Notes under the pieces: model-generated
The model's input: only the letters and a program-made list of their open reading frames with translations
Told to the model about the DNA's origin: nothing
The model's database searches: none
Part shown: piece after piece, positions 22,068 to 44,300 of the stretch
Numbering within the stretch: position 1 is the first letter of the stretch
How the letters are laid out: each line of letters begins with the position of its first letter
Translations under genes and position numbers: made by a program
Assembly: GCA_900088475.1 (NCBI GenBank)
Contig: FLMG01000355.1
Span: forward strand, 124,001 to 188,000
Source: Hyphochytrium catenoides
Lineage: Eukaryota > Protista > Hyphochytriomycota
Direction: 5' to 3'
Length of the DNA stretch: 64,000 nucleotides

Positions 22068-24953
22068 CTATGCCGCCGTGGGCCATTTCTTACAGTGACC
22101 AAGGTCACAACGCTGAAGCCTAACGACCGCCAAGATCCGCTCAGGCAGCTCGGCTTTGGCCTTTCCTTCCAGAACAAAAGCCAGATCCAGAACCAACATC
22201 GTCAAATATCCTTTGACAACCTTGAGGACCCCTTGCGCTACGCTAGAAGAGCCAACGTCGCAGTCTATTTCAAAGTAGTGCTCCCCCTTGAAGTACCTCT
22301 GCGTTAACTTGTTCCCCAGGATAGCTGGCGTACTGCCAACTGAGCTCTTGACAATCCAGTTGCCCTCAGTCACATTTGGGATGATCTTGAGGCGACTATC
22401 GCGGTAGGAGTCCGAACCATTGAGAAAATTCTGCCAAAGAGTTCCCCATGGTGTCCCTGGGTCAAAGGCATTCGATTCCTTGGCCTGAAAATAGAGGACC
22501 AAAGCCATCTGTGGCGAGCCAGGAATTTGAAACTGCATAACGAGAGTGAAAGGGCAGGGCACACCTCGACGCTTTGCCTCTTCGATCGCCAGCTGCACCC
22601 GGTTCTGCGGCTTAGAGGCAATGTGGTCTGTTTTCTCAAGTACCTCAAAGAGGTCTGTGGCTACTAGGGACAGAAGCGCAGGCTTGGAAGGAATTTTCAC
22701 CTTGTCTTCCAAGTACCCGGGACCTCTAACCTTAAACTGCGTGCCATCTCCGTTGACGGCAGAAGGAAATGAATCCTGCACACTCCGCAGGATTAACTCT
22801 TCTCTGTGTAGCTGCTCAACATCCGGCTTGACGGCGCCGCTGGCAGCGGCTACACCCTCGTGCCTTAGCAAATCCTGGCGTCGGCCTGCTGAACCAAGAG
22901 CGTCCGGCTCCGGTGGAAGAAGCTCTAATCCATCCGTTCCGAAATCTTCACCATGAAGCTGGCCAGATTCCTTTATAATTGACAAGCGCTGTGTCACGAG
23001 AGCCGCTTCTTTTTGAAGCTCTTCACTCTGCGTCGGACTGAGGTACTGGCGCAGCTTGTAATGGTCCTGAAGCCTGACAAGGTGTCCAAGAAGCTCAGAT
23101 GTATAGAGGTGAACAAAAAATAGAAAGTGTGCCAGCCAGCCGCCTGGCTCTAGTTGCATGAAGCAGGTTACAAGGCAGCTCGGCGGCAGAAGCGAGGAAT
23201 AGTGATCCCTGTTTCGTCCCTTGATGTGATAGCCCTGGACCTTCAACCGGCCCCTAATGTACCCAGATCGAGGCGGGCAGGCCTTATGGGAGCAGCTAGT
23301 CATGGAAATAACGTATGATCCATCTCCTTCCTTATTCCATCTTCGGAGGACACAGAAGTCCCTGGCAGCCACAGGAAAGAACCAAATGCTACACGGCCTG
23401 ACGGCAAAGTACACGACGTCTGTGTGCCTATCAATCCTCTCTACCACTTGGACCTCTTTGATCACTGGATTCCATTGATGGTAGCTACTAACATCTCGCA
23501 GCGTCCTGAATACCTCCTCAGTGGCGCTTTCCACTACAGCCATCGCCTTAACACAGCCCATCTCCTGCAGAAAGTGCTTACTGAACGGTGGCAGGTAGGT
23601 CCTCAGCCCATTGCGAAAGAAGAGAGGTCTCCACTCCTGCCATGGTATGAGCAGCCATCGAAGAACGTAGGATAGGGCCGAAAGCACTACTGCTATTCTA
23701 GGGTCACCGCTCCTGCCCTCTTCTCCACTAGAATTGGCCGGTGAGAGCTGGATGGATGAACTACCCGAGGCCAAGTTACGCTCGTCAGACTCATAGTAGA
23801 CGTTGGGAACTGTTCTCGACCCTCTTCGCGACCGCATGCCGTTGGACTCGGAGCCAATAGCCGATGATGGACTCCGAACAGTTGTTAGTGGACCTGCCTC
23901 TAATGCAGGAACAAGAAGCCTTGGCAAGAGACCGGGCATCAAGTCTTTCCTGGGCGCTGAGGACGCACTCTGGTAGAGTTGTCCGTCTTGAGCTCCTACC
24001 GCAGCTTTGTGAGTGTCACCATTGAAACCATCAACAAACTTCCTCGCTGGCGAGCCATTCTCTGGTGTGACAACTAGAGACGAATTTTCGCTGTGTACAG
24101 TCTCTCCGCCAACGGCTATGGACGGAGGAGATAGAAGCAGGTCATCTGGTTGCGCACCGACGTCCTTGGTGCTATCAGTACTAACGGTACCGTTATCAGA
24201 GGACCCAATGTCTAGGGACTGTGAAGTCCCGCAAACGCTATTGATGACGGAAACCCAGTGGTCTACAGAGCGGACGGACTGCGAGGCGAACAGCACACAG
24301 CCTAGCTCCCCGCTTTGCTTTAGAAATGTCCTTGCCTCTGTGTTGTCATATTCCATCGCCGTCGCCGGACTTGGAACAGAGAATCTGGACCTCTTACCTC
24401 CTGACTGCTTGCTCTTGCCTTTTTTTCCCTTACGAGTCTTTGGGGCATCCGCCGAACAAATACCTAGGGCCTTCTCCGCAGCCTCCAAGGATGTAGGACG
24501 AAACACCTTGAACGTAAAGAAGACATCCTCTGGGTCCTCTCCGGCAAGGAAATCGTCCTCGTCCACCGATATCCGGTACTTCACCGCCATCTCATGAATG
24601 TTGCCTTCTTTCTTTGCTGCCCAGTCACTACCGAGAGGTATGGCGATTAGAGGTTCCGTGTCGCCAGGATGGCGCAAACATATCAGATTAGCGTTGGAAC
24701 ATATTGCGTACACATCCCACCACTTGGATGACTCCACGCCCACCTTGATCTTCAGCCAACCCGTCATATTCGCAAAGGAAGGAGCTTCAATCTCGGCTCC
24801 TAGGGTATCATACTCCCTATCCTCCGTATCGGCAGATTCGGCTGGCATAGATGGAGCCGACATTTCATCACGGGATGGCGCTAGTTGGAGTCCAGACGGG
24901 CCCAAAGGTAGGAACGAGGCCATACCATGAGGGTCACTGGCCTTGGAGTCCAT
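22068..24953 (-). CDS. EDR2-like lipid-binding protein (PH-like + START + DUF1336/EDR2_C), intronless
   Basis: N-terminal PH-like segment (GWLKIK...WVSVINSV). START domain (VKAMAVVES...ARDFCVLRRW...SGYIRG). C-terminal FKVRGPGYLEDKVK...RLKIIPNVTEGNWIVKSSVGSTPAILG...EIDCDVGSS...ELPERIL. Confidence 0.9.
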   Translation of the reverse strand: MDSKASDPHGMASFLPLGPSGLQLAPSRDEMSAPSMPAESADTEDREYDTLGAEIEAPSFANMTGWLKIKVGVESSKWWDVYAICSNANLICLRHPGDTEPLIAIPLGSDWAAKKEGNIHEMAVKYRISVDEDDFLAGEDPEDVFFTFKVFRPTSLEAAEKALGICSADAPKTRKGKKGKSKQSGGKRSRFSVPSPATAMEYDNTEARTFLKQSGELGCVLFASQSVRSVDHWVSVINSVCGTSQSLDIGSSDNGTVSTDSTKDVGAQPDDLLLSPPSIAVGGETVHSENSSLVVTPENGSPARKFVDGFNGDTHKAAVGAQDGQLYQSASSAPRKDLMPGLLPRLLVPALEAGPLTTVRSPSSAIGSESNGMRSRRGSRTVPNVYYESDERNLASGSSSIQLSPANSSGEEGRSGDPRIAVVLSALSYVLRWLLIPWQEWRPLFFRNGLRTYLPPFSKHFLQEMGCVKAMAVVESATEEVFRTLRDVSSYHQWNPVIKEVQVVERIDRHTDVVYFAVRPCSIWFFPVAARDFCVLRRWNKEGDGSYVISMTSCSHKACPPRSGYIRGRLKVQGYHIKGRNRDHYSSLLPPSCLVTCFMQLEPGGWLAHFLFFVHLYTSELLGHLVRLQDHYKLRQYLSPTQSEELQKEAALVTQRLSIIKESGQLHGEDFGTDGLELLPPEPDALGSAGRRQDLLRHEGVAAASGAVKPDVEQLHREELILRSVQDSFPSAVNGDGTQFKVRGPGYLEDKVKIPSKPALLSLVATDLFEVLEKTDHIASKPQNRVQLAIEEAKRRGVPCPFTLVMQFQIPGSPQMALVLYFQAKESNAFDPGTPWGTLWQNFLNGSDSYRDSRLKIIPNVTEGNWIVKSSVGSTPAILGNKLTQRYFKGEHYFEIDCDVGSSSVAQGVLKVVKGYLTMLVLDLAFVLEGKAKAELPERILAVVRLQRCDLGHCKKWPTAA

Positions 24954-25879: not shown

Positions 25880-27995
25880 ATGGACGTCACCTCCAGGAAC
25901 CAAATGTACGTAGAAGGACATGCCTTTCCTTGACAGAAACCTGTTGTCATCCTTTGCTATAGGGGCAGGAAAGATCTACCAGTCGCCGAGCGGGATCTGG
26001 CCACCTATGGCATAGCACCTAGTCTCCTAGGTAGGGGATACCTTTAAGATGTCACGTTGTCCTGACTCATAATAATGAAAGGAAACCAGCGGCATTGTTG
26101 CGGGCAGGCTATCGCACGGGCAAGGACGTTGCAGACACTCTTCCAAGAGAACTGGCTGCGGGTATTATCTGACATTGGCTTACCCTTAGTCTGGAAAACT
26201 AAGCTATTCCTGGGCAGAAGCAAAAATAAGTGTTGATGACGCTATCAGAGTCTTGAGTGCCGTGCGGAGTTGTGGCAACGACAGGGCCGTGGCTTCCGCC
26301 GTCGTCCCGGCCCTGCATTCACCGGGCTTGTCAGCTCTGGACCTCTTCCTCGTAGGTTATCTCAAATGTTGGAAATCCCCGATTCTGCTGGTTTTAATGT
26401 GCTCTCTGGCTACTCAAAGAAACGGAAGAAGAACAAGCCCATCATAACGTTCTGCAGTGATCTGGATATGATGCTGGGCGGTGGCCTACAGCGCGGAGAA
26501 GTCACAGAGTTCTGTGAGTCTGATCTCACTCTCTTTGCCGTTCTCACTTTAACTTTCCCTTGACGGATAGGTGGTGTGCCAGGAATTGGAAAGACTCAGC
26601 TCGGGTAGGTGATGTGTGCCACGAGACCACGCACATGCCTATATTCTCACCGTCGCACCCTCACTCATTAGTATACAGTTGGCGCTTGATGTCCAGATAC
26701 CTGAGGATTTTGGGGGCGTTGGGGGCGAGGCAGTGTATATTGGTAAGTATCTTTGTAGTTAACATAGCAGTGGATAGGACACTAACCTCGACTATTCCGT
26801 TAGATACTGAGGGAAGCTTCATGATAGAACGAGTTGCAGAGATGGCAGAGGCAGTCCAGCAGCACGTCGGAAACATTGCGGTATCAAACTTCTCCCCCAG
26901 CTCAGTACTTTTCTTGTCGTGGTGTCTCGAGCCGTCGCTCCTACGCGAGCATGTCTCGTCGATGCACATATCACGGTTACTCCTAGAACTTTATAATGTC
27001 TCCTATCCAGCCCTAGACATCTTAGCTATTTCGTGCACTAGAATCCTAAAAACATCAAGCTGACACGGGTCCCCGCAGAAGAGGAACCCACAATATGCAG
27101 CTGCAGCTGAAGACTTCACAATGGAGAAGCTTCTTCGGGGTATCCACTGCGCCAGGGTCTATGACAGCTGTGAGCAGATGGCGGCGATTAACGCTCTGCA
27201 AGACTTTCTCAGAGATCATCCGAGGGTCAGGCTGGTGGTCCTAGACAGTATTGCGTTCCACTACAGGCACGACTTTGAAGACGTTGCCCTGCGTATGCGA
27301 CAACTAAGCTCTGTAGCGCAGCTTCTGCTAGGTTTAGCCCACGACTTTGACGTTGCGGTAAGCCGCAAAAGAGAGAGAGAGAGAAGACGAGAGGTAGCCC
27401 CCACTTTAGCCTACAGAAGCATACCATCATAGAAGAGCTGCAAGTGAAAGTCAATGTCTCTCTCTTCGTTTGGCGCTAAGCATGTTCCTTGTAGGTTGTT
27501 CTAATCAATCAGGTCACGACGAAGGTCAATGTGGGCTCCACTACGAGCCCAAGCTTTTCCAAGATAATTCCAGCCTTAGGTATTTGTTATGTTTGGTCGT
27601 CCTCAAGACGTGGCTGACCTTCCCCATCCTTGTCGTTTGCTCAAACCTTCTCCCTTCCTACTGGTCTCATCACCGGTAACCCCAGGTGAGAGCTGGTCTC
27701 ACGCTCCAACCAATAGGGTGATGCTGTTCTGGCAGGTAACTACTTTGTGCTTCGGCCCTTAGTGGTCGACCTCACTGGCTTATATTTTCTCCGTCGCTTA
27801 GGATGGACAGCGCTTTGCCCACCTGATGAAGTCACCTAACCGGGAGCAACAGACGGTGCAATTTCAAGGTAACGCGATCTACTGACTATTGCTATGCTAT
27901 TCTTAGCTCAAGCGTTGCGCCTGGCAGTGAACGAAAAGGGCATCAGGGGTTTGCCCTCAAAGAAGAGACGCTTCCAGGAGAGAGCGGAGAATTAG
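25880..27995 (+). CDS. RAD51C: DNA repair protein RAD51 paralog C (multi-exon)
   Basis: IITFCSDLDMMLGGG...VTEFC|GVPGIGKTQLG (Walker A); QIPEDFGGVGGEAVYI|DTEGSF; VRLVVLDSIAFHYRHDFED (Walker B); PAL|GESWSHA. Confidence 0.93.
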
Positions 27996-28176: not shown

Positions 28177-31100
28177 TTAGAAGAATATACCGCCCTCATC
28201 ATCCTCCTCCTGCAAAGTATGGAAATATTCGGTCAGCGTCTGCGAGGAAACAGTCCTCGGGAAAGTGTGTGCGCCTTGATGGAGGGGCAGGACGCTCATA
28301 CTTGCACTCTGGGGCAGACCGCCAGTAGGTGCATGCTGTTGATTAAGCGTTGCCGTGAAGCGGGACATGTCATTCATGGAGAAGATGCGGTTGGCTGATG
28401 TAGAAATTTTGGTGAGAGACGTAAGAAGCTCAATCACACTTTCCACATCGTTGACGTAGTATTGAGCTGCGCTGGGTTTCTTGCCCACCGTCACTGTGTA
28501 ACAGTTCTTCAGCCTACAAATATAAGGCCATGCATCAGTTGGATATGCGACTTTGAGGTTGCGGAGAGAGCAGGAGCTATCCACCCGGCAGCGTTGTGCT
28601 CAGTCAATTTCTCATGTATGCAGTTCGCTTGCCAAGAGACAGGACAAGAGAGAGAGGACACAAAGAGAGGAATCCCCCATTGAAAGACTGCTAGCGCGTA
28701 ACTCCAAAAGCCAGAAGGATGGAGGTCTTTTCAAGGCTAACTGTCTCAAAGATGCCGCCATGGGTTACCTGGTTCTCTCTTCTAGCTCTACAAACATGGG
28801 CTCGTCAGAAGCATCGTCGCCTATGCACAGCACGAAGTCCACATATTGGCTGGTCGTGCTCTCGACTGTGGAAAGAATCCGGTCTACCATCAGCCCCTTA
28901 TGCACGCCCTCAGGGCGAACTTCAAGATAGCCTTTGCCTATGAGAATCTATGGTGTGACAAAGTTAGGCAAGCAGTAAAAGTTTTTAGACAAAGAGAACC
29001 TAAAGTTTAGGGAAAGGTCAGGACTGGAACTTACGTCTACGTTGAAGTGCTCGAGGACTTGCACCAGTTGGTCCTGCAACTCCTTTGCCTGGAGCATGCC
29101 AAACTCTGGGTCGGCATCCGAATATTGCCACACCAGAGCACTTCCTTTCTTCTCGATATATGTGCCATCCGTGCGCTGCCAAAAGAAGTGGTCCACTTTC
29201 GTCAGCCCTATGAGCTTAAACCTCTGTCGTTGTCTCACTTCCTCTCTCTTCCTCTCTCTCCCTCTCTGTTTTCTATTCCTTCTCTCGCCCTTGGCAGGGT
29301 AATGTTTCTCTAATAGCTAACCGGTCCCACTTCGGCTTGACTGCTTTACAAGTTCATCGTCCACCCGGTATATCTTTTCTCCAATGAAGGTCTAACCTGA
29401 GTATAGATGTCCATTATGGAGTGCGTGATCTCCTTCCAGCTGTCATCGTTCGTTCTCTCGACCACTGTCTCCCAATAATTCGCATCCGAGTCCACAAGAT
29501 CTAGTTCTTCTGCAAAGAGGCGGACCTCAAGGTCATGCCCTCTATCCTCAGACCGCGGCCAGTGATAGAAGTACCCGTGCTCAGCGGCTAAGCCAAGACT
29601 TCGAACTTTTGTGAAAGCCTTGGTAAACCCGAGAGTGAGTATAGATTGAGCTAACGGCACCGAGTCTTTGAATGCTGACTCGACTTTGTGGGAAGGACTT
29701 GACAGCAGTAAGCAAAGCAAGGATGGTCAGTTCGTGGCTATACCTTTTTCAAGTCACTTCGTTCTTTGCCACTGAGGATAAAGACAGTGTTTCTCGGATC
29801 ATCGCACAGCTTCTGAAGTAGGTTCAGAGTACTGGGACGCAACTCCTCAACCGCCTCTTGACGCTCCTGGAGGTACTTAGTATACCTACACGCCTTATTT
29901 AGTCTACAGAGCGTTATGTGCCTTTTGTTCTCTCTCTTCTTTGCCACTTCTAGCTGTGGTTTCTATCGGTCATCTGCTTCTGTTATTTTGGTCCTTCTTT
30001 GACCATAAGCGGCACCACACTGTGAGAACTCTAGGTTGTTTTCCTAGTGAGAACTTCCCAATACTTGTGTAGCCGCCTGTAGGGGTAAAATCACTATCAG
30101 CAACCAGTCCTTACCGATTCTGTGGCTCTTCTGCCACGAGCGTCCCCCCAAAGTCCAGCAAAATGCATCTTCTGGAGCTCTTTCGGTATTGCCGCAGCAC
30201 CTTATCGACGTCTAGTGCTTGAAAGCCGTGATGCATTCCCAACATTCTGAAGCCAAAGCCAAAGCCCATGCTTAGATAGTCCACATCGTCCAGTTTTTTG
30301 TGAGAACGCTTCAAGTCCACGAGCACGCGTTCCGCCCACCGAGTGGTGGTGTTCCCTAAGATATACTGGAATGACACGAGTTAGAAAAGCAGGAACGTAG
30401 GCATGGCCACAGCGATAGAATCTGCTTCACTAAGAGAACAAGAGCAGAAACAACAGAGCCGGGAGGCAGAGAAAAGAGAGCCAGCTCAGGAACGGGGTAG
30501 GTTGATAGGAAGCGAAGTAGTTGGGATTGCATCATATGGAAGCCAATAGGGGTGAAGGTTGAAACAGTGGAGTCGCGGGACACCTGCAGAGTTCTCTGGT
30601 GTCTATCTTTTCTCAAGTCTTCAGATTGTGAGAATATCTGCTCTATGGCTTCCACCACTTCTTCCTTCCTCCATGGATTGACCGACCAGGCGCCATGTAA
30701 TACTCTGCTGCATCCCACAAACTCTGACATTATGAGCGTCCCCGGTTGCCTTTGGAGGTTCTTACTAACAAACTCTTGCGTATAGACATACTCAAAGGGG
30801 TTCAGCTGGATGCCACCGCGTACGTGCGTGAGGAGCTTTGCGGGAAAGGACAAAGGTAGGTGTTAGGGCAAACATCCACTCAAATAAGGTAGGGGAAGTA
30901 GCTCCGGCAATGGGGGATCTAATGTCCTACTAGCGGGGTGAGCAGAAGGTATCTGAGACTACATAGAAACACTTGGAGAACTTGGGATATCCTGTCAATA
31001 GCCAGCAAGGCGTGGAGCCTGATATCAACACCTCTTGAACTGGCGGGATTTTCGTCGCCTAGCACTTACAAAAGCATCTGCCATTCCCATGTATGCCATC

Positions 31101-33739
31101 CGCTCTTCAAAGGATAAGCTTGGTACTTCCTTGTAATGAATAACAGGATCATCTGGTCCGCCTCCTGTCGGAAAATCCTGGTTGATCTGATCTCTGAGTA
31201 ATCGCACCTCCAGCAGTGTTTGTTGATAGGATTTCTGGCGTGATACGTATTCCCCACTGTCTGCCACACAGACCTGTAGTGCAACACCAGGAAAAGGATA
31301 TTATAGATGTCGCGCAAGGAGTAAGTAAACCCTTCAGGGCGGTGCAAAGCCACACCCAAGAATTGACTAGAGCAAATTTCTCTGTAGAGCAAGATAGATG
31401 GCAAGGAAGAGTAGCGCAGAGGAGGTAGAAGGGGCATGAGCGAAGGCGATTTGGAAAAACGGAGTACAAGAGCGCTTTTGAAAAGAAAAGAAGTGGGCAG
31501 CAAGCATGCTAAGTACCTGGACTAATCTGAGGATACGGGCTTGCTCCGGATACTTCTTGAGGAATTCACGCAGGGCCAGAAGCTTCAGCTGAATGCCACT
31601 GAGCCTACCCAGACTGTCCAGCCCGCACAGCACTACTTTCCCTTTATATTCCTCGATGAGCTGAGTGACCTGGCGACAAGAAGATCAGTGTACTCCATAA
31701 AAGCCTCAGCTCAAAGGGTACTACAAGACAGCTATAAATTCAGGCTATAGACATAAAAAGACGCTATGAAGCAGCCAATATCGAACGACAGGCATTAGCA
31801 TTGGTAGCTTTGCAATACCCGGGTATTATAACTTTCAGTCTCCAGAATGGAGTCCAGAAGGGAGGGTTCAATGCCTGCGTGACTAATAGTGATATTCACT
31901 AGCCGTCCTCCGTAATCCACACCCAAAAACCCTCCCTGCTGTGGACCGTAAGTCAAGCCCATAATCCTGCGACAGCTGGTCAAGAAATGCCTTGCGTACT
32001 CGTAGAGGTGAAAACCTGTGACAAGAACTCATGTTAGAAGCGGTAAGCGCAGCACCATATTAGCTCTCCGAAGAGGAGGTCTCCACCGAAGACGTGATCT
32101 TGAACGAACGAACGAACGTAGAAGGACTATATACTTGGGATACCTATGTGATCTGCGCTTAGCATCCCTGAAAGTAAGGCATCCCTCACCGAGAGGGTCC
32201 TGAACAGCTCGGATGAGGGGAAAGGTGTGTGCAGAAACAGCCCTATATTCGCCCTCCTTAGACGTCGGGAGAGAAAGGAAGGAAGGATCAGGAGGTGCAG
32301 GTCATGGACCCATATCATATCTCCCTCATGATAAGCTTCGACAACCTGCAAATAAAAAATAATTCATCATTTACAGTCAAAGCCCTTAAAAATCCAAGAA
32401 GAGGCAGGTTGAGATGGAATCTACGAGGTCCGCTTCATAGTGAATAGTATAAAGATAGAGTGGAGATAGCATTCGACTTCTCTCGTACCGCGTCGCTGAA
32501 AACCTTATTGGCAGTTGCATATGTGGACCAAGCTGTGTCTTGCTCTGTAGGGTTCCACCATCTCGTAGGAAGCTCTCCATAGACGTCAATAACGTTATGG
32601 AAAATAGGCCAAAGGGTTCCTAAGCAGTACTTCTCATATCCCTTTGCTAGGTCCGGACTCAGAAAGACCGGCCAGCAGCGAAAGGGCTGAAGAGCCTCAC
32701 TCACAGCATCCTCTTCATCGGGTGTGATGACTGTGTTGCAAGGTACTGTACCCACCCATACGACACGCATACCATCGCTAGCATAGCTTTGGCCACTGTC
32801 TTGGGTTCTGTGGGTAGGGCAAAGCAGCTGATCTCGGTCCCATTGTACGTTCCAAGTCCCGTCTTCCTTCTTTGTAACAATGACAGGAAGTTTATAGCAG
32901 ACGATCAACACGGAATCGGATTTGCTTATTGTAGTTTCCTGCAGCGAATCGTCAAAGGAACGCCGGCGCTTGACTGGTCCTTGACGCGGAGGGGATCCCA
33001 TGTTCTTGATATGCGGATGAGGGATTCTGCCAGATGACTTAGTGTTCTGGTGTCGTATAACCTGTGCACTGGGCACGGCGCTCTTTGTCTCAACCTCTAG
33101 ACCCGTCGCGACGGATGGAGGTGAAGGACTGCTAGGGATAATCTGGTCTGAGACAAAAGCCTCACCAGTATGCAATCTAGGAATGAGAGGAAAGCCGTCA
33201 GGTTGAACAGTCTGGGGGACAGGCGTCCCATAGTCTTTATCCAGGGTGTCTTGGATGAGAAGCTCGTGTCCTTCTACAGAGACGGAGTGAACGGTATTGC
33301 CTTGCTCCCAGCGCTAAGAAGTAAGAGGGTGGTAAGTCGACTCAATACATGTTTTGCTTGAAATTGAAGGCGCTGGGCTCCCATCATCCTACCTTGAACT
33401 TTCCTCCTCCGAAGATGGCATACCTAAACCGCAGCTCCGTGCCTGTGTGGATCATAACAGGATGAGGGTTGAACCATAGAGGATAGAGCTCCGGTGTAGT
33501 CACGAGCTCGACGCCGTTATCGAGCGGAGATGAATGACCAGGCTCCGCAGGACGATCTGAGGCCACCACGAGGCTCTCGCCGTGCCGCAGGTTGGCCGTA
33601 AGCTCAAAGTCCACCCGTGTCTGAGGTGCAAACTAAAATAGCATATGCGTAAGGATTGGTAATAAAGGCGTGCAAGCAGAAAGACTGGACATACCTGTTG
33701 TCGGAACCTCTCAGAACTGAGAGAGCCCGAGCCCCTCAT
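28177..33739 (-). CDS. TPS: Trehalose-6-phosphate synthase/phosphatase-like fusion with N-terminal CBM20-like domain (multi-exon)
   Basis: Exon 1 MRGSGSLSSERFRQQ; CBM20-like VDFELTANLRHGESLVV...TPELYPLW...LRFRYAI. GT20 motifs LWPIFHN, IWVHDLHLLILPSFL, GLFLHTPFPSSE. TPP motifs AAEHG, YIEKKGSALVWQYSDADPEFG, LCIGDDASDE, TVGKKPSAAQYY. Confidence 0.93.
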
Positions 33740-33792
33740 CCTGCTGCTGTTCTTTGGCAATCAATTGGGGGAATTGTAGATGGTGGGTGGCT

Positions 33793-34009
33793 CTAAGATG
33801 GGCATAACCATGGACCGACCTATGACACTACAGCTCGATTCACCGCATCAATCAGGAGTGCTACCCCAAAGCGCTAGATAATAAGCAATCGCACAGTTAG
33901 CTCCACCGTGCCCTTGTAGGCTGTGTCCAGGTATACAATGGCACCTTCATCCACTTTCTTGCTTTTAGACCTTTAGACCTGAGTTGGCCGGGAAGCATAC
34001 CTTACCCAT
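33793..34009 (-). CDS. Spliced 32-aa upstream ORF of the TPS/TPP gene (MGKKVDEGAIVYLDTAYKGTVELTVGPWLCPS*)
   Basis: Exons 34009-34001, 33957-33895 and 33819-33793. Introns GTATGC..AAG (43 nt) and GTGCGA..TAG (75 nt) are both phase 0. The TAG lies 53 nt before the main ATG at 33739. Confidence 0.7.
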
Positions 34010-35927: not shown

Positions 35928-37018
35928 ATGACATCAACAGCGAATCCCGAATCGGCCATTCTACTACCTGGTGCTCCTTTGTGTGAGAAATCCAGCGGGT
36001 CTGAATACCAAAAGCACCTAGACGAGATTAGAGCAATTGGCAAAGTTGATCTCGGACCTTTGAAGTCTGTTATCTTCCCCTTATCTGAAATTGATAAAGT
36101 CAAGGTAAGCTAGACAAAAGTTAGAGAGTAATTGAACCCGAAGCCCGCGCCAGGAAAGCTCCAACAGCCAGTCGAGGACTTCCCATGCACCACCTATACC
36201 CTCGTAGGACTGACACCTGCTATGTCCTTTGTCCTTTCTCGGGTAATTGAAGGACGAGGAGCGCCTCAAAGGCTGGAAGATGAAAATTGTACACTACGTA
36301 CGGCACGGCGAAGCAATGCACAACCTCGCTGCCGCCACCTCCAAAACTCAACCTGCCTGTGGATGTAAACTATCTCCCCCAGGGCCCTGTGTCTATAAGG
36401 ATCCTGCTCTAACGGATCCAGCGTAAGTGCATCTTTCATGTCTTTGCTTAGCACTCGTTGTTGGCTCTGTGCATTCAAGAAAGTGTGGCCATCTCTCTCT
36501 TCGTTAGGTTGACCCCATTAGGCGAAGAGCAAGCTAGAAGTCATCAAGAGCACGCAAAAAACCTACGGGTGGATCTCGTGGCGGTCTCTCCGCTCAAAAG
36601 AACCTTGCAGACAGCAGCTCTTGCTTTTGCGGAAACGTTAGGAGGTAGCCGCCCTGCATTTATAGCCGTAGAGGAGTTACGAGAGCAACAAGGAGTGCAT
36701 CTCGGAGACAAGCGCCGGCCCACTTCTGAAGCAGCGAAAGAGTTCAATTACGTCGATTTCTCCCTGTGCCCAGCGGATGACGACAAGTGGTCTGATAATG
36801 TGCGAGAACCTCGTTTGGATATTGCTAAACGAGGATATCGCTATTTGCGTTGGGTACATGACCGCGAAGAAGCTAACATTGCAGTTGTGTCACATTCCAG
36901 TTTCCTTTTGACGCTATTCAATCTTTGCCTAGAGACAGATAATACTATGCTGAAGCAGTGGTTTGCTACTGGCGAGCTACGATCAGTTGTACAGTTCAGC
37001 AAGCTAAATGATATTTAA
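35928..37018 (+). CDS. Histidine phosphatase (phosphoglycerate mutase-like) superfamily protein, spliced
   Basis: KIVHYVRHGEAMHN (RHG motif, ~36280-36325); LTPLGEEQA; VSPLKRTLQTA; EELRE; IAVVSHSSFL (second His). Confidence 0.88.
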
Positions 37019-40561: not shown

Positions 40562-41311
40562 TTACTTGGTAGGGCTCAGCGAAGGCTCAGGTTGAGATCT
40601 TGCTGGTTCAGCACCACCCTCCACAGGCTTCGTTTCAGCTAGAGACTGTGCGTCCGTAACTCCTTCCACAGACTTCGTACCTGCTCCAGATGTCTCCTGT
40701 TCCTTGTCCTGTTTCGGTTTGACCATCTCTTCATCTTCTGAGCCGTCCTTCCTCTGCTGGTTACTTTGGCTTCCTCCGCCAAAGAGATTCCTGGTGCTTC
40801 CAACGACATTGTCTCTCGTCTGTAAAACGTTAGACCGCACGGCAGCCCAAGAGGATTTCTCTTTCGCCTTCCCTACCACTGACCCAACGCCACTAGAGAT
40901 GGAGGATGCGAAGGATTCAATCTTGTCTAGTAGTGCGTCAGCGTGAACGGCGTCAGCCACTGTGTCAGCAAACCTCTCCGCTTCTGTTTGAATATAGCTG
41001 AGACCCGACTTCCCTTGCTCCTCCTTCGGTCGGACAGTCCCTGAGACGATGATGGATAAAGTTAAGATATCCTCGTCCGGTTTCTTTTTCGAGTTCATAT
41101 ACCGTAGGGCCTCTGTGAGGTCATCGTCACCCTTGACGGCAATTTTATCGCCATCACCGTCCACGTAGTGCAGTTGGAAGTCAGGCGCAAGGCAAAGAGT
41201 TTGATCCACTACTTCTCGAAGCCCCTGATACGTGACTTCTGCCTTGGAAACACTGATCCGTCGCAATTCGCCATTGAATGAGAGCTTTAGAGATACATTG
41301 GATAAGTCCAT
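40562..41311 (-). CDS. PB1-domain protein with low-complexity C-terminus, intronless
   Basis: LKLSFNGELRRI (basic Lys) and FQLHYVDGDGDKIAVKGDDDLTEAL (OPCA motif). First ATG at 41311. Confidence 0.85.
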   Translation of the reverse strand: MDLSNVSLKLSFNGELRRISVSKAEVTYQGLREVVDQTLCLAPDFQLHYVDGDGDKIAVKGDDDLTEALRYMNSKKKPDEDILTLSIIVSGTVRPKEEQGKSGLSYIQTEAERFADTVADAVHADALLDKIESFASSISSGVGSVVGKAKEKSSWAAVRSNVLQTRDNVVGSTRNLFGGGSQSNQQRKDGSEDEEMVKPKQDKEQETSGAGTKSVEGVTDAQSLAETKPVEGGAEPARSQPEPSLSPTK

Positions 41312-44300
41312 GGCTAGAAATGCGTTTCGCTTGAATTTTGGTTTGGGATGTAGCACGCCAATCAATGCAAGCAGTAGCCGGCGGTGCCACACAGTTACTA
41401 GCGGTTTCTGTCCTGGCTGTCGCCCGACGGCTCGCAGCTCCACTTCCTCCAGGGCTGGTATTGAGTCTGGCTGATTTCTCTTCTGCTGAGAGACGAGTGG
41501 GAGATGAGCAACTGAGCCTGAAGGTTATGTCAAAGAACGAGCGCAAACAGGTAATGATACAGGTTTGGCGGTCTGAGATGCATGGCACTTTGGTGCCGAC
41601 CTAGATACTAGGAAGATGTCACTTCTGAAGCTTCTTCAAGATTACCGATGAAAGCTTCGTGTAGGTTTCCGGAGTCATATTTTCTGCCCTGTACTAAAGG
41701 ATTTTTATAGAGCAACCAAAGAGGCGGAAGCTTTAATGCAGCCCAAGGTTTCAGAATTAGCCAACAGCAAGAGACGCTGGGTCAAAAGAGAGGTTACTAA
41801 GTGCTGCATAACATACCGCATTATGCGCCAATTTATGAAACGGAACTGTACTGATACGTTATATCTTATTTTGCAGTAGAAATTGTACCGGCAGCTACAA
41901 GGGCACCTACAGCAAGATATCTCCTTTCTATGGCGCCTGCCGACAATCTTTGGAGCGCGATCGACTTAGCGAAGATGTAGAAATTTCTTGATGATTTTTG
42001 GATGATTGTTCTTCTATCCTTTGAGCTACAAAGCAATCATCACTGTCAACCGATGATATCATGAAAGGCTTCTTCTTGTTTGCCTATGATAATGATGTCC
42101 CTAGGATCTCTCTTGAAGTGCGGGTGGCAAAGTCCGTGTTCATCAACAGCTAGGTCATGCTCAAAGGCTGTAGCACTTCTGCTGAATCAGGTAGTAACGC
42201 AGCAGCATAATGCTATGTTCGATCGTGGTCCTGACGGCTGCTTAGATGTTACATGTATGGACTCTTTGGCAAAGCTGCTCGTGACACAAAGGGCATCAAG
42301 TCAACAGCTATGGCTTGTTTCGCGGCTGGTGGTGAGGGAGAGCGAAAAGGGAGGGATGAAGTATCGGCTTTTCATTTCCATCACATATACACATTCTTCG
42401 TTGCTCCTTGCTCCCGCGGCGGCACTGAATGAGTGATCAGGAGGATCCATCACAGATGTGTATCCTCTACTTCCTGTTCAGCTATGCCTCTGATGCAAAA
42501 AGTTCGATTTCCAACGTGCAATAACGCCATAGTGGTAAGGCCCAGAAGGTCGCCTCTCGCATCACCTCTCCTTCTTTCACAAGAAGCCTCTATTACAATG
42601 TGTTGGCTCTTCGAAGGGAAGGCTCGCTCTTGTCTAGTAGGGAAGGCTAGATCGTCAAGAGGACAAACAAAAGGTTTGGTTTAAGGTAGGGCAGCACTGA
42701 AATTCCGTCGTTCTTTGCCTAATGGCTTAAGAGTATGTGAGCCTCTTCTGTTGGGGATAATTATAGACAAAATGCAGAGAGAGTCATTGAAAAACAAAAC
42801 TTCTTATCATTCTGATCACTTGCATTATCCTGCCTCCATACTACTGGTCCTGCTATATACATGCGGTTGGGAGAAGCGTAGTCCTCATGACCCTTCTTGA
42901 CTTCTCCTGGCACAAACTGCTGATGATAATACTTAGGGGCACGACCTTTCTCCTCTTTTCATTCTCACCCGACGTTTGGGTAGACGAATGAGGGGAGCCA
43001 ACAGGAGAGGTGTAGCTTAGAGCATCTCTTTTCCCTTCTAGTCTGCCGTAGTGGACTTACTACTTCAACAATTGCTTGTGCTAAAAAAGGAAGTAAGGGA
43101 AGAAGTATTATGTTTTAGAGTATAGACTGGTTGTTTGGGGATAAGACAACCTTCTTGTAGGGTCTTTCATGCGATGCTTAGATAGTGATGCATCGGCTAC
43201 CGACCGTTCTGGAACTGTTAATAGCTTGTTAAGCGGAACAGCAATATCGGGGACTCTGAACCATAACGTGAACAAGGGACTCCGAGGAGTGTCTCGCAAA
43301 AAAAGGCACTGTTGGCCTAGTACCTGCTGGCAGTGCTGGTATATTGCCAAAAGAGATAATTAGCTTTACCTTTGATGCATAGTAGAGAGCCTTTTGACTA
43401 TATGAAGCTCTAAAAGAACACATTCTGGACTACGTCTGCAAAGCCAACAGAGAAGTAGTGGTGGTTATCGGGCTTGACAGGCCCTTTATAACTTATTACT
43501 ACGCGCCTCCCAAGTTCTTGGTGTGGCCCTTCTCGGTCTTGCCGTATTGGTTGATAGAGAACATCTTGCTTCTGCCAGCCTGCCTACAGTAACCCCATGC
43601 GCTATCAGATATCAGAGCTCTACTAGTGGTCAGTTTCGTTTGTACTTGGTACAGCCAGAGCTGGCCGAGCGGGCTCAGGAACTACAATGCAAGACCTCTC
43701 TGTCGATTCATTCTTCTGATGTGCAATCATGGAGCTGATAATAAGAAGTTCAACACAGCAATGAAGCAATGAAGCCTGGACAAGACTTATTCAGTTGGAA
43801 CAATCAGTGTCATCAAGAGCAACGACAACAAGGGCCGTTGGACAACCATCAGACCATCAGCACCAGCAGAACATGGGACAACAGGATCACAGGATAATAA
43901 CGCAACAAAAGAAGACAGCAACAGAACTCACAGGAAGATTCGGCTCAGAACCTAGGTACAGTCAAAGTAATAATAAAAATACCCTTGCGTCTAAACTAGT
44001 GGTCTCGCGTACTATTACGTTCTTGACTAGGGAAGTCCAGCCATACTAACACAGATCACTAGTCATCCCAGGTAACACATTAACTATGGCTTGAGTCAAA
44101 CTCATACATAAGCTCCAAATTTTTGTCTTGGTCCACCATCTCCCCAGCTCTGATGATGACTCGGCCTTCTTCCACTTCTCCCTTCGTTTCCTTCAGCCTT
44201 CAGTCCTCGTCACCTCTCGCCTTAGTGGCTGGATGATCCGGCTTCTCGAGTACGGTTTCAGATGCCCAAAGAGTGGCAATTGCCGAGATGAAGAGTGGCA

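What the first reader, a model, noticed from the sequence alone, without database searches (positions are those of the whole stretch)
28177..33739. The CBM20-TPS-TPP fusion looks like a double pseudoenzyme (sensor or scaffold)
Seen in the GT20 domain: the OtsA/TPS1 motif RDGMNLV..E reads RGGIQLNPFE (~30790-30830; Asp and Asn lost). GVDRLDYIKG reads GLDSLGRLSG (~31600-31630; the UDP-glucose-binding Arg and Lys are lost). NRLP reads YKLP. Seen in the TPP domain: HAD motif I DYDGTL reads DFGGTL (~30138-30158; second Asp lost) and SGR reads SGK, while GDDxSDE is kept. Known: plant class II TPS proteins are regarded as non-catalytic regulators, and CBM20 binds glucans. Inference: a sugar-phosphate sensor tethered to a glucan, which fits tight uORF control of its abundance.
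Basis: partly seen in the sequence, partly recalled or inferred. Interest (0 to 1): 0.7.

Follow-up and report, generated by a model that had tools for sequence, protein, structure and literature searches.

The report
Catalytically dead CBM20-TPS-TPP protein gene
This intact 14-exon gene of an oomycete-like protist encodes a trehalose-synthase/phosphatase look-alike that has lost the residues both reactions need, so it probably acts as a regulator or scaffold, like known 'dead' TPS proteins of plants and yeast.

Summary
I built a 14-exon, all GT-AG, 1131-codon minus-strand model (33739-28177) with three parts: a CBM20-like N-terminus, a GT20 (TPS) domain and a HAD (TPP) domain.

It is the sister of the oomycete "CBM20 domain-containing protein / trehalose-phosphatase" orthologues (43-47% identity, collinear end to end). 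It belongs to a large stramenopile family.

**TPS domain.** The Arg-Lys-Asp triad (E. coli OtsA R262/K267/D361) reads Ser/Ser/Gly. R9 is Lys and N364 is Gln. All 38 oomycete orthologues keep K267 and D361, and only 6 of 174 relatives lack all three. This is a lineage-specific loss, and published single-alanine mutants at these positions severely impair fungal Tps1.

**TPP domain.** The Asp+2-to-Gly change in HAD motif I is not private decay. Nearly all 145 relatives share it, while the nucleophile Asp and motifs II-IV stay conserved.

**Verdict.** A non-catalytic TPS domain is well supported and a crippled phosphatase is likely. The "glucan-tethered sugar-phosphate sensor" idea remains inference. 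No RNA data were available. This is a new variant of a known kind (plant class II TPS, yeast Tps3/Tsl1) and of moderate interest. The scan's only other note on this stretch is this same finding.

The parts
28177..33739 (-). Whole gene: 14 exons, 13 GT-AG introns of 74-255 nt, 1131 codons plus stop. Exons: 33739-33695, 33620-33393, 33313-32489, 32345-32144, 32015-31819, 31669-31517, 31273-31070, 30835-30584, 30365-30115, 29903-29744, 29618-29397, 29175-29035, 28947-28769, 28513-28177.
   Evidence: Model built from open frames, splice consensus and collinear tblastn of relatives. The start codon, the first acceptor (33632 or 33620) and the junction 30115->29903 are the least certain.
33293..33620 (-). 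CBM20-like N-terminal domain (about residues 16-115), split by the 79-nt intron 33392-33314.
   Evidence: Residues 1-125 match orthologue N-termini. Those N-termini hit Pfam CBM_20 (P0158 E=1.2e-9) and weakly match the glucoamylase starch-binding domain 1AC0. The window's own exon piece gives no Pfam hit.
30312..32911 (-). GT20 (TPS-like) domain, about residues 226-720, spread over exons 3-9.
   Evidence: Pfam PF00982 on six exon pieces covering profile positions 3-459 of 473; alignment to OtsA.
32885..32896 (-). YKLP. Corresponds to OtsA N-R9-I-A; the Arg that binds the glucose-6-phosphate phosphate is Lys here.
   Evidence: Arg in 37/38 oomycete orthologues. Coordinates.
31595..31624 (-). 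GLDSLGRLSG. The UDP-phosphate Arg-Lys pair (OtsA R262, K267) is Ser, Ser here.
   Evidence: K267 is Lys in 38/38 oomycete orthologues.
30791..30820 (-). RGGIQLNPFE. The donor-glucose Asp (OtsA D361) is Gly and N364 is Gln; the ribose-binding Glu (E369) is kept.
   Evidence: D361 is Asp in 38/38 oomycete orthologues.
32208..32234 (-). LHTPFPSSE. The His154 motif is kept and is near-invariant in the family.
28801..30155 (-). HAD / trehalose-phosphatase-like domain (about residues 770-1050), exons 9-14. Motif I DFGGTL 30155-30138, motif II SGK 29773-29765, motif III Lys within EVRPEGVHKG 28923-28894, motif IV GDDASDE 28821-28801.
   Evidence: Pfam PF02358 on exon pieces; alignment to OtsB and 145 relatives.
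28180..28308 (-). Conserved C-terminal tail: a Ser-rich SASMSVLPL segment (28308-28282) and the terminal TEYFHTLQEEDDEGGIFF (28233-28180).
   Evidence: Oomycete, brown-algal, eustigmatophyte and diatom relatives end in an acidic run followed by GGIFF or a near variant (47 of 219 long relatives).

Best explanation
This is an intact, selectively maintained nuclear gene of an oomycete-related stramenopile. It encodes the lineage's copy of a conserved stramenopile protein with three parts: a CBM20-like domain, a GT20 (TPS-like) domain and a HAD (TPP-like) domain.

In this lineage the GT20 domain has lost the Arg-Lys-Asp triad that holds the UDP phosphates and the donor glucose. It has also lost two or three further ligand contacts. 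It almost certainly cannot make trehalose-6-phosphate or any other glycoside.

The HAD domain keeps the nucleophile Asp, the Mg/phosphate ligands (motifs II-IV) and the positions I recall as sugar contacts. Like nearly the whole family, it has Gly in place of the Asp+2 general acid/base. At best it is a very slow phosphatase. More probably it is a phospho-sugar binding site, or one that forms a long-lived phospho-aspartate.

The protein therefore most likely works non-catalytically. It would be a ligand-binding regulatory or scaffold subunit, positioned by its CBM20-like head and by a conserved acidic GGIFF-ended C-terminal tail. This parallels plant class II TPS proteins and yeast Tps3/Tsl1.

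What is shown: gene integrity, orthology, residue states and their distribution among relatives. What is inferred: loss of activity (from published mutagenesis of homologous residues), ligand binding, glucan tethering and partners.
For: **Gene and orthology**
- Gene model with an open 1131-codon frame and 13 GT-AG introns.
- Pfam GT20 and Trehalose_PPase on exon pieces.
- Collinear 43-47% identity to 38 oomycete orthologues from residue 16 to the C-terminus.
- Sister position in the tree, SH-aLRT 93. The end branch is 1.1 against about 0.93 for the sister path, so evolution is not strongly accelerated.
- 174 of 248 oomycete-invariant GT20 columns are kept.

**GT20 residue states**
- R262S, K267S, D361G, R9K and N364Q.
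- K267 and D361 are invariant in 38/38 oomycete orthologues.
- Only 6/174 relatives lack all three triad residues.
- In Cryptococcus Tps1, K420A, D514A, E522A and R453A each cause severe loss of activity. These residues are the equivalents of K267, D361, E369 and R300 (PMC11317593).

**HAD residue states**
- Motif I is D-x-G in 36/36 oomycete orthologues. Only 2 of 109 other relatives have the canonical DYDGT. Motifs II-IV are conserved.
- Brugia T6PP D215A (the Asp+2 position) drops kcat from 24 to about 0.0004 per second (PMC4081830).
- Positions matching OtsB E123, K125 and E167 and the AEHG His are kept.

**Other support**
- Conserved C-terminal motif.
- Precedents: non-functional Tps1-like domains in fungal Tps2 (PMC11997177); class II TPS proteins proposed as T6P sensors for SnRK1 (bioRxiv 10.1101/2025.08.17.670254).
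- Another TPS/TPP gene is noted elsewhere in this genome (finding s1-343169). It matches the tail-anchored oomycete paralogues, which keep K267, R300 and D361.
Against: - No expression or splicing data: no RNA run was listed.
- No activity or binding was measured.
- The non-conservative changes are not statistically concentrated at ligand sites (2 of 7 against a background rate of 0.17, P=0.33). The 'dead' call therefore rests on biochemistry, not on an enrichment test.
- 102 of 174 relatives keep the triad. The TPS domain of a red-algal CBM20-type member (PhTPS4) shows weak UDP-Gal + glycerol-3-P activity despite lacking R262 and R300 (PMC6642608). Members of this family can be enzymes.
- Strict conservation of every HAD catalytic residue except Asp+2 could equally mean that chemistry persists by another route.
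- The CBM20 lacks the equivalents of glucoamylase W543 and Y527 (hand mapping). Stramenopiles are not known to store starch (my own knowledge), so the glucan tether is doubtful.
Confidence: 0.6

Rival explanations
1. The TPS half is dead, but the HAD half is still a working enzyme. It could be a phosphatase or phosphotransferase that does without the Asp+2 general acid. For example, it might act on a substrate with a good leaving group, or use another residue or water network.
For: All other HAD catalytic residues are conserved across about 145 relatives: the nucleophile Asp, the motif II Ser, the motif III Lys and the motif IV DD. This pattern is typical of a site still under functional constraint. 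Some HAD enzymes naturally lack Asp at +2; P-type ATPases have Thr there (my own knowledge).
Against: In a bona fide T6P phosphatase the Asp+2-to-Ala change lowers kcat about 60,000-fold. The window's protein additionally has Ser for the Arg of the cap 'H-Y-R' motif. That Arg is present in 36/36 oomycete orthologues.
Confidence: 0.2
2. The GT20 domain is a divergent but active glycosyltransferase with other substrates, as reported for red-algal CBM20-type (iso)floridoside-phosphate synthases.
For: PhTPS4 and Galdieria Gasu_10960 have the same three-domain architecture, and their TPS domains gave isofloridoside in vitro (PMC6642608). H154, E369, D130, W85 and Y76 are kept here.
Against: The active red-algal protein keeps D361, N364 and E369 and lacks only G22, R262 and M363 among nine donor sites. 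Here K267, D361 and N364 are also gone. Single mutants at the K267 and D361 equivalents severely impair Tps1. The reported red-algal activities are very low (0.2-0.6 umol per h per mg).
Confidence: 0.08
3. The locus is a decaying or unexpressed gene copy, and the motif losses are simple erosion.
For: No RNA evidence could be obtained. The losses are lineage-specific and not enriched at ligand sites.
Against: A 3.4-kb frame stays open across 14 exons with consensus splice sites. 70% of oomycete-invariant GT20 columns are retained. The family's C-terminal GGIFF motif and all other HAD motifs are intact. Branch length is similar to that of the orthologues.
Confidence: 0.05
4. The gene model is wrong, and the real mRNA uses other exons that carry canonical motifs.
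For: The model is computational. Exon 1, the first acceptor and junction 30115->29903 are uncertain.
Against: Each aberrant motif lies inside an open frame that aligns to homologues through the motif. A six-frame scan of the whole window finds no canonical RD[GAS][MLIV]N motif on the gene's strand, no Arg-Lys motif and no D-x-D-G-T motif.
Confidence: 0.03

Closest known systems
Oomycete 'CBM20 domain-containing protein / trehalose-phosphatase' orthologues (e.g. Pythium oligandrum Poli38472_004533, Lagenidium giganteum N0F65_000165, Albugo candida, Saprolegnia parasitica SPRG_02494)
   Same: Same three-domain order and full-length collinearity at 43-47% identity. Same D-x-G HAD motif I and SGK motif II. 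R300 and G22 are likewise not conserved. Same acidic GGIFF C-terminus.
   Different: The oomycete proteins keep R9, K267, D361 and mostly R262 and N364, but have Gly at D130. The window's protein keeps D130 and has lost the others. It also lacks the long insertion in the oomycete CBM20. None of these proteins has been characterised, as far as my searches show.
Plant class II TPS proteins (AtTPS5-11), non-catalytic regulators and proposed T6P sensors acting on SnRK1
   Same: TPS-TPP fusion proteins regarded as catalytically inactive and regulatory.
   Different: Plant class II proteins have no CBM20. They keep K267, R300, D361, N364 and a canonical DYDGT/SGR phosphatase site; only R262 is changed, to Asp. 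The window's protein is far more degenerate in the TPS site and lacks Asp+2. It is only about 33% identical to that clade's level of relatives and is not a member of it.
Toxoplasma gondii TGME49_297720 (CBM20-TPS-TPP)
   Same: Same domain architecture. Phosphosite mutants change amylopectin accumulation. Enzyme activity is unproven, and trehalose has not been detected in the parasite (PMC11414933).
   Different: The authors assume a bifunctional enzyme. I could not obtain its sequence, so its residue states were not compared. An alveolate relative with CBM20 (Perkinsus, P0315) has K267S, D361S and motif I DNEGEL.
Red-algal CBM20-type (iso)floridoside-phosphate synthases (Pyropia PhTPS4, Galdieria Gasu_10960)
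   Same: CBM20 + TPS + TPP architecture. R262 and R300 are not conserved.
   Different: Their TPS domains are reported as weakly active and keep D361, N364 and E369. Their TPP domains were never assayed, because alkaline phosphatase was added to the reactions.
Yeast Tps3/Tsl1 and the N-terminal Tps1-like domain of fungal Tps2
   Same: GT20 domains kept as non-functional modules thought to mediate complex formation (PMC11997177; the Tps2 N-terminal domain 5dxf is the best PDB match of exon 6).
   Different: Different lineage, no CBM20, and Tps2 has a fully active HAD domain.

Membership tests
Active GT20 trehalose-6-phosphate synthase (OtsA/Tps1) | GT20 fold / Pfam PF00982 match | tested here: met
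   Six exon pieces cover profile positions 3-459 of 473; best E=2.5e-27.
Active GT20 trehalose-6-phosphate synthase (OtsA/Tps1) | Arg-Lys pair binding the UDP phosphates (OtsA R262, K267) | tested here: not met
   Ser and Ser.
Active GT20 trehalose-6-phosphate synthase (OtsA/Tps1) | Donor-glucose Asp and Asn of the R-D-G-M-N-L motif (D361, N364) | tested here: not met
   Gly and Gln.
Active GT20 trehalose-6-phosphate synthase (OtsA/Tps1) | His154 and ribose-binding Glu369 | tested here: met
   Both kept.
Active GT20 trehalose-6-phosphate synthase (OtsA/Tps1) | Glucose-6-phosphate contacts R9, Y76, R300 | tested here: not met
   R9 is Lys, Y76 is kept, R300 aligns to Ser in a gapped loop, so that one residue is uncertain.
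Active GT20 trehalose-6-phosphate synthase (OtsA/Tps1) | T6P synthase activity | not testable with these tools
   Needs an enzyme assay or yeast tps1 complementation.
HAD-type trehalose-6-phosphate phosphatase (OtsB/Tps2) | Pfam PF02358 match | tested here: met
   Exon pieces: E=3.3e-10, 2.6e-8, 1.5e-6 and 6.7e-6 (the last at 25.8 bits is below the 27-bit cut-off).
HAD-type trehalose-6-phosphate phosphatase (OtsB/Tps2) | Motif I nucleophile Asp | tested here: met
   First Asp of DFGGTL.
HAD-type trehalose-6-phosphate phosphatase (OtsB/Tps2) | Motif I Asp+2 general acid/base | tested here: not met
   Gly here, as in nearly all 145 relatives.
HAD-type trehalose-6-phosphate phosphatase (OtsB/Tps2) | Motif II Ser/Thr, motif III Lys, motif IV Asp-Asp | tested here: met
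   SGK, RPEGVHKG and GDDASDE.
CBM20 starch-binding module | Pfam PF00686 match of the window's own sequence | tested here: inconclusive
   The exon-2 piece gives no hit. The joined domain was not handed to Pfam. Homology to orthologue N-termini that do hit PF00686 is clear.
CBM20 starch-binding module | Glucan-contacting aromatic residues of binding sites 1 and 2 | tested here: inconclusive
   Hand mapping through. Equivalents of W563, W590 and N595 are present, K578 is Arg, and W543 and Y527 are not conserved. Residue numbers come from my own knowledge of A. niger glucoamylase.
Stramenopile CBM20-TPS-TPP orthologue group | Full-length collinear similarity and tree position | tested here: met
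Stramenopile CBM20-TPS-TPP orthologue group | D-x-G motif I and acidic GGIFF C-terminus | tested here: met
Plant class II TPS | Canonical TPP motifs (DYDGT, SGR) with a TPS site altered mainly at R262 | tested here: not met
   the plant proteins keep K267, R300, D361 and DYDGT; the window's protein does not.
Plant class II TPS | T6P-dependent binding to SnRK1 | not testable with these tools
   Needs a protein interaction assay.

The most novel reading that the evidence does not exclude
The CBM20-TPS-TPP proteins of stramenopiles (and perhaps alveolates) could be an ancient family of sugar-phosphate receptors. In this reading, their HAD domain was converted long ago into a binding site or slow phospho-switch by replacing the general acid/base Asp with Gly. 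The window's protein has also lost the glycosyltransferase triad. It would then be a natural separation-of-function form, showing that the family's core role is non-catalytic signalling. That role would be comparable to the T6P sensing proposed for plant class II TPS proteins, but would have arisen outside plants.
Probability: 0.25. Interest if true: 0.65.

Novelty: new variant of a known kind. Interest (0 to 1): 0.42.

Why it matters
Dead TPS-like proteins are now seen as sugar-signal sensors in plants and as complex subunits in yeast. Outside those groups, such proteins are annotated and discussed as bifunctional enzymes. One example is the Toxoplasma CBM20-TPS-TPP protein that influences amylopectin levels.

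This analysis shows two things. A whole stramenopile family shares a HAD site without its general acid/base, and one lineage has also lost the transferase triad while keeping the gene intact. That cautions against inferring trehalose synthesis from these annotations. It also offers a clean protein for testing non-catalytic, ligand-binding roles.

The practical consequence is modest. It guides annotation and suggests binding and assay experiments, but it does not reveal a new kind of system.

Tried and rejected
- **RNA evidence.** The look-up of sequencing runs listed no run, so read laying could not be used and the splice model is unverified.
- **Pfam on the CBM20 exon piece.** No hit. PDB search with that exon gave only a chance match.
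- **First splice scorer.** Scoring by consensus alone ranked wrong junctions. I replaced it with homologue-guided scoring and direct reading.
- **First full-length MAFFT.** It misaligned the OtsA N-terminus onto the CBM20 region, so R9 and G22 were re-read from domain-restricted alignments.
- **Enrichment test.** The test for changes concentrated at ligand sites was not significant (P=0.33).
- **Toxoplasma TGME49_297720.** A second word search seeded with P0022 did not return it, so its residues were not compared.
- **Literature gaps.** The PNAS 2016 Tps2 structure paper is not held. A text search for DYGGT-type motifs found nothing relevant. Searches on oomycete TPS biology found nothing useful.
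- **Synteny.** The pyruvate kinase fused to this protein in some oomycete annotations has no counterpart in the window.
- **Rejected as evidence.** SGK for SGR is not a sign of loss, because it is the family norm. The plus-strand RDGVN match at 33278-33292 is antisense chance.
- **Left out under the operators' rule.** The joined spliced protein was built and aligned only inside scripts. It was never handed to Pfam, PDB, protein-search or folding tools, so no structure was predicted.

Full report
**Gene model.** The interval 28177-33739 holds a multi-exon gene on the minus strand. Open frames there carry GT20 and trehalose-phosphatase similarity. I derived a 14-exon model from splice consensus, collinear tblastn of relatives and direct reading of the junctions. 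It has 1131 codons, 13 GT-AG introns of 74-255 nt and no frame break. The least certain points are the start codon (33739), the first acceptor (33632 or 33620) and the junction 30115->29903. I chose that junction because the closest full-length relative has an insert of similar length there. No RNA run could be listed, so the model is computational. All database and family searches used exon pieces by reference.

The quoted motifs lie at these places:
- YKLP: 32896-32885.
- GLDSLGRLSG: 31624-31595.
- RGGIQLNPFE: 30820-30791.
- DFGGTL: 30155-30138.
- SGK: 29773-29765.
- GDDASDE: 28821-28801.

Alignments to solved active enzymes place them opposite RDGMNL, GVDRLDYIKG and DYDGTL. Against E. coli OtsA (L001) the states are R9K, R262S, K267S, D361G, M363I and N364Q, with R300S probable. 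Y76, W85, D130, H154 and E369 are kept. A six-frame scan of the window finds no alternative exon with the canonical motifs.

**Organism and family.** An exhaustive profile-free search with the largest exon found nothing above about 47% identity. The top named hit was from Pythium insidiosum. A word search seeded with the best full-length hit (P0002) returned a tight set of oomycete orthologues annotated 'CBM20 domain-containing protein' or 'trehalose-phosphatase'. They come from Pythium, Phytophthora, Albugo, Saprolegnia, Aphanomyces and others. It also returned many ochrophyte relatives from diatoms, brown algae, Nannochloropsis, Vaucheria and Triparma.

The model is 43-47% identical to the oomycete set from residue 16 to the last residue. 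In a maximum-likelihood tree it is sister to that set (SH-aLRT 93). Its end branch (1.1) is similar to the sister path (about 0.93). Earlier notes of this scan also call the genome oomycete-like or stramenopile.

**CBM20.** The assignment is indirect. Orthologue N-termini hit PF00686, and the model's N-terminus is clearly homologous to them. Its own exon piece does not reach Pfam. By hand mapping through, the equivalents of two classical binding aromatics are not conserved.

**TPS domain.** Among 38 oomycete orthologues:
- K267, D361, H154, W85 and E369 are invariant.
- R9 is Arg in 37.
- R262 is Arg in 27.
- D130 is Gly in 35.
- R300 is never Arg.

The family is thus already atypical, but it keeps the Arg-Lys-Asp triad: 102 of 174 relatives have all three, and only 6 have none. 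The window's protein has none, so the loss is specific to its lineage.

The literature describes the Arg-Lys pair as the UDP-phosphate ligands and the Asp as the counterpart of the Glu in the Arg-Lys-Glu triad of retaining GT-B enzymes. Single alanine mutants of the K267, D361, E369 and R300 equivalents severely impair Cryptococcus Tps1 (PMC11317593).

For comparison, plant class II TPS proteins are regarded as inactive, yet they differ from OtsA only at R262 among these sites. The weakly active TPS domain of the red-algal CBM20-type PhTPS4 keeps D361, N364 and E369 (PMC6642608). I therefore rate a non-catalytic GT20 domain at about 0.85.

One caveat applies. The model retains 174 of 248 oomycete-invariant columns, and non-conservative changes are not significantly enriched at ligand sites (P=0.33). 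The argument is biochemical, not statistical.

**TPP domain.** The Asp+2-to-Gly change is not private to this gene. Motif I reads DYG[NSGD]TL in all 36 oomycete orthologues and D-[YWF]-G-G-T in most of 109 other relatives. Only two of those have DYDGTL. Meanwhile the nucleophile Asp, the motif II Ser, the motif III Lys and the motif IV GDDxxDE are conserved. SGK is the family norm.

In Brugia T6PP the Asp+2-to-Ala mutant falls from kcat 24 to about 0.0004 per second (PMC4081830). The red-algal assays say nothing about this domain, because only TPS domains were expressed and alkaline phosphatase was added.

Positions equivalent to OtsB E123, K125 and E167 are kept here. I recall these as T6P sugar contacts but could not verify that from a held paper. 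The Arg of the cap H-Y-R motif is Arg in 36/36 oomycete orthologues and Ser here.

An ancient, fixed D-x-G site with an otherwise intact phosphate pocket fits a binding site or a very slow phospho-switch better than decay. It does not exclude residual or different chemistry; I give that rival 0.2.

**Other features.** The protein ends in an acidic run followed by GGIFF, preceded by a Ser-rich S-M-S segment. Both are shared with oomycete, brown-algal, eustigmatophyte and diatom relatives. This argues for a conserved docking or regulated tail and against a decaying gene.

Oomycetes have further TPS-TPP paralogues without CBM20. These keep R9, K267, R300 and D361 (with R262 as Thr), have motif I DYYRTL, and end in a hydrophobic segment followed by basic residues. 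That matches an earlier first-reader note of a tail-anchored TPS/TPP gene elsewhere in this genome (s1-343169), which I could not inspect. A separate, less degenerate TPS-like gene therefore probably exists. Whether it is active is unknown.

**Interpretation.**
- Shown: an intact orthologue of a conserved stramenopile CBM20-GT20-HAD protein, with lineage-specific loss of the transferase triad and the family-wide loss of the HAD general acid/base.
- Inferred: no TPS activity, little or no TPP activity, and a non-catalytic regulatory or scaffold role.

Analogues are plant class II TPS proteins (proposed T6P sensors for SnRK1), yeast Tps3/Tsl1 and the dead Tps1-like domain of fungal Tps2. The Toxoplasma protein with the same architecture affects amylopectin levels through phosphosites, has no proven activity, and trehalose has not been detected in that parasite (PMC11414933).

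The uORF link cannot be assessed. Upstream ATGs exist, for example a 16-codon frame at 33811-33761, but the transcript start is unknown.

**Novelty and score.** TPS-like pseudoenzymes and the CBM20-TPS-TPP architecture are both known, and the orthologues are already in public databases. What I did not find described is twofold (limited to the held library):
- the family-wide D-x-G HAD site together with the conserved GGIFF tail;
- a member that has also lost the transferase triad.

I class it as a new variant of a known kind, with interest 0.42.

Noticed in passing
window 28180-28308 (-): The protein ends in a Ser-rich S-M-S segment and an acidic run followed by GGIFF. 47 of 219 long relatives (oomycetes, brown algae, Nannochloropsis, diatoms) end in G-[IVL]-F-[FIL]. 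I found no description of this motif.
   Followed up: partly
relatives P0270-P0279, P0301, P0304 (oomycete paralogues without CBM20): A second oomycete TPS-TPP paralogue group keeps K267, R300 and D361. It has HAD motif I DYYRTL and SGC, and ends in a tail-anchor-like hydrophobic segment plus basic residues. It probably corresponds to the tail-anchored TPS/TPP noted elsewhere in this genome.
   Followed up: partly
window 29100-29110 (-), about residue 935 of the model (the 'QYS' in VWQYSDAD): The Arg of the HAD cap 'H-Y-R' motif is Arg in 36/36 oomycete orthologues and 75/109 other relatives, but Ser in this protein. This is a further lineage-specific loss in the phosphatase-like domain.
   Followed up: partly
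window 33761-33811 (-): A 16-codon upstream ATG frame ends 22 nt before the proposed start codon, and more ATGs lie further upstream. The transcript start is unknown, so uORF status is open.
   Followed up: no
window 22068-24953 (-): A single 961-codon open frame with START and EDR2_C domains (E=1.1e-66), i.e. an ENHANCED DISEASE RESISTANCE 2-like lipid-binding protein.
   Followed up: no
window 26560-27760 (+): Multi-exon gene with Rad51-family similarity (piece 27121-27432, E=5.5e-7), convergent with the 3' end of the TPS-like gene.
   Followed up: no
window 36458-37018 (+) and 40562-41443 (-): A histidine-phosphatase (His_Phos_1) frame and a PB1-domain frame upstream of the gene.
   Followed up: no
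relatives P0179, P0180, P0184: In Plasmopara halstedii and Phytophthora kernoviae the orthologue is annotated as a 'pyruvate kinase' fusion (PF00224 + GT20 + TPP, 1589-1778 aa). This is probably a merged gene model. No pyruvate-kinase similarity is present in this window.
   Followed up: partly
relative P0315 (Perkinsus marinus): An alveolate CBM20-TPS-TPP protein also has K267S, D361S and a degenerate motif I (DNEGEL). This suggests repeated loss of catalytic residues in this architecture.
   Followed up: no
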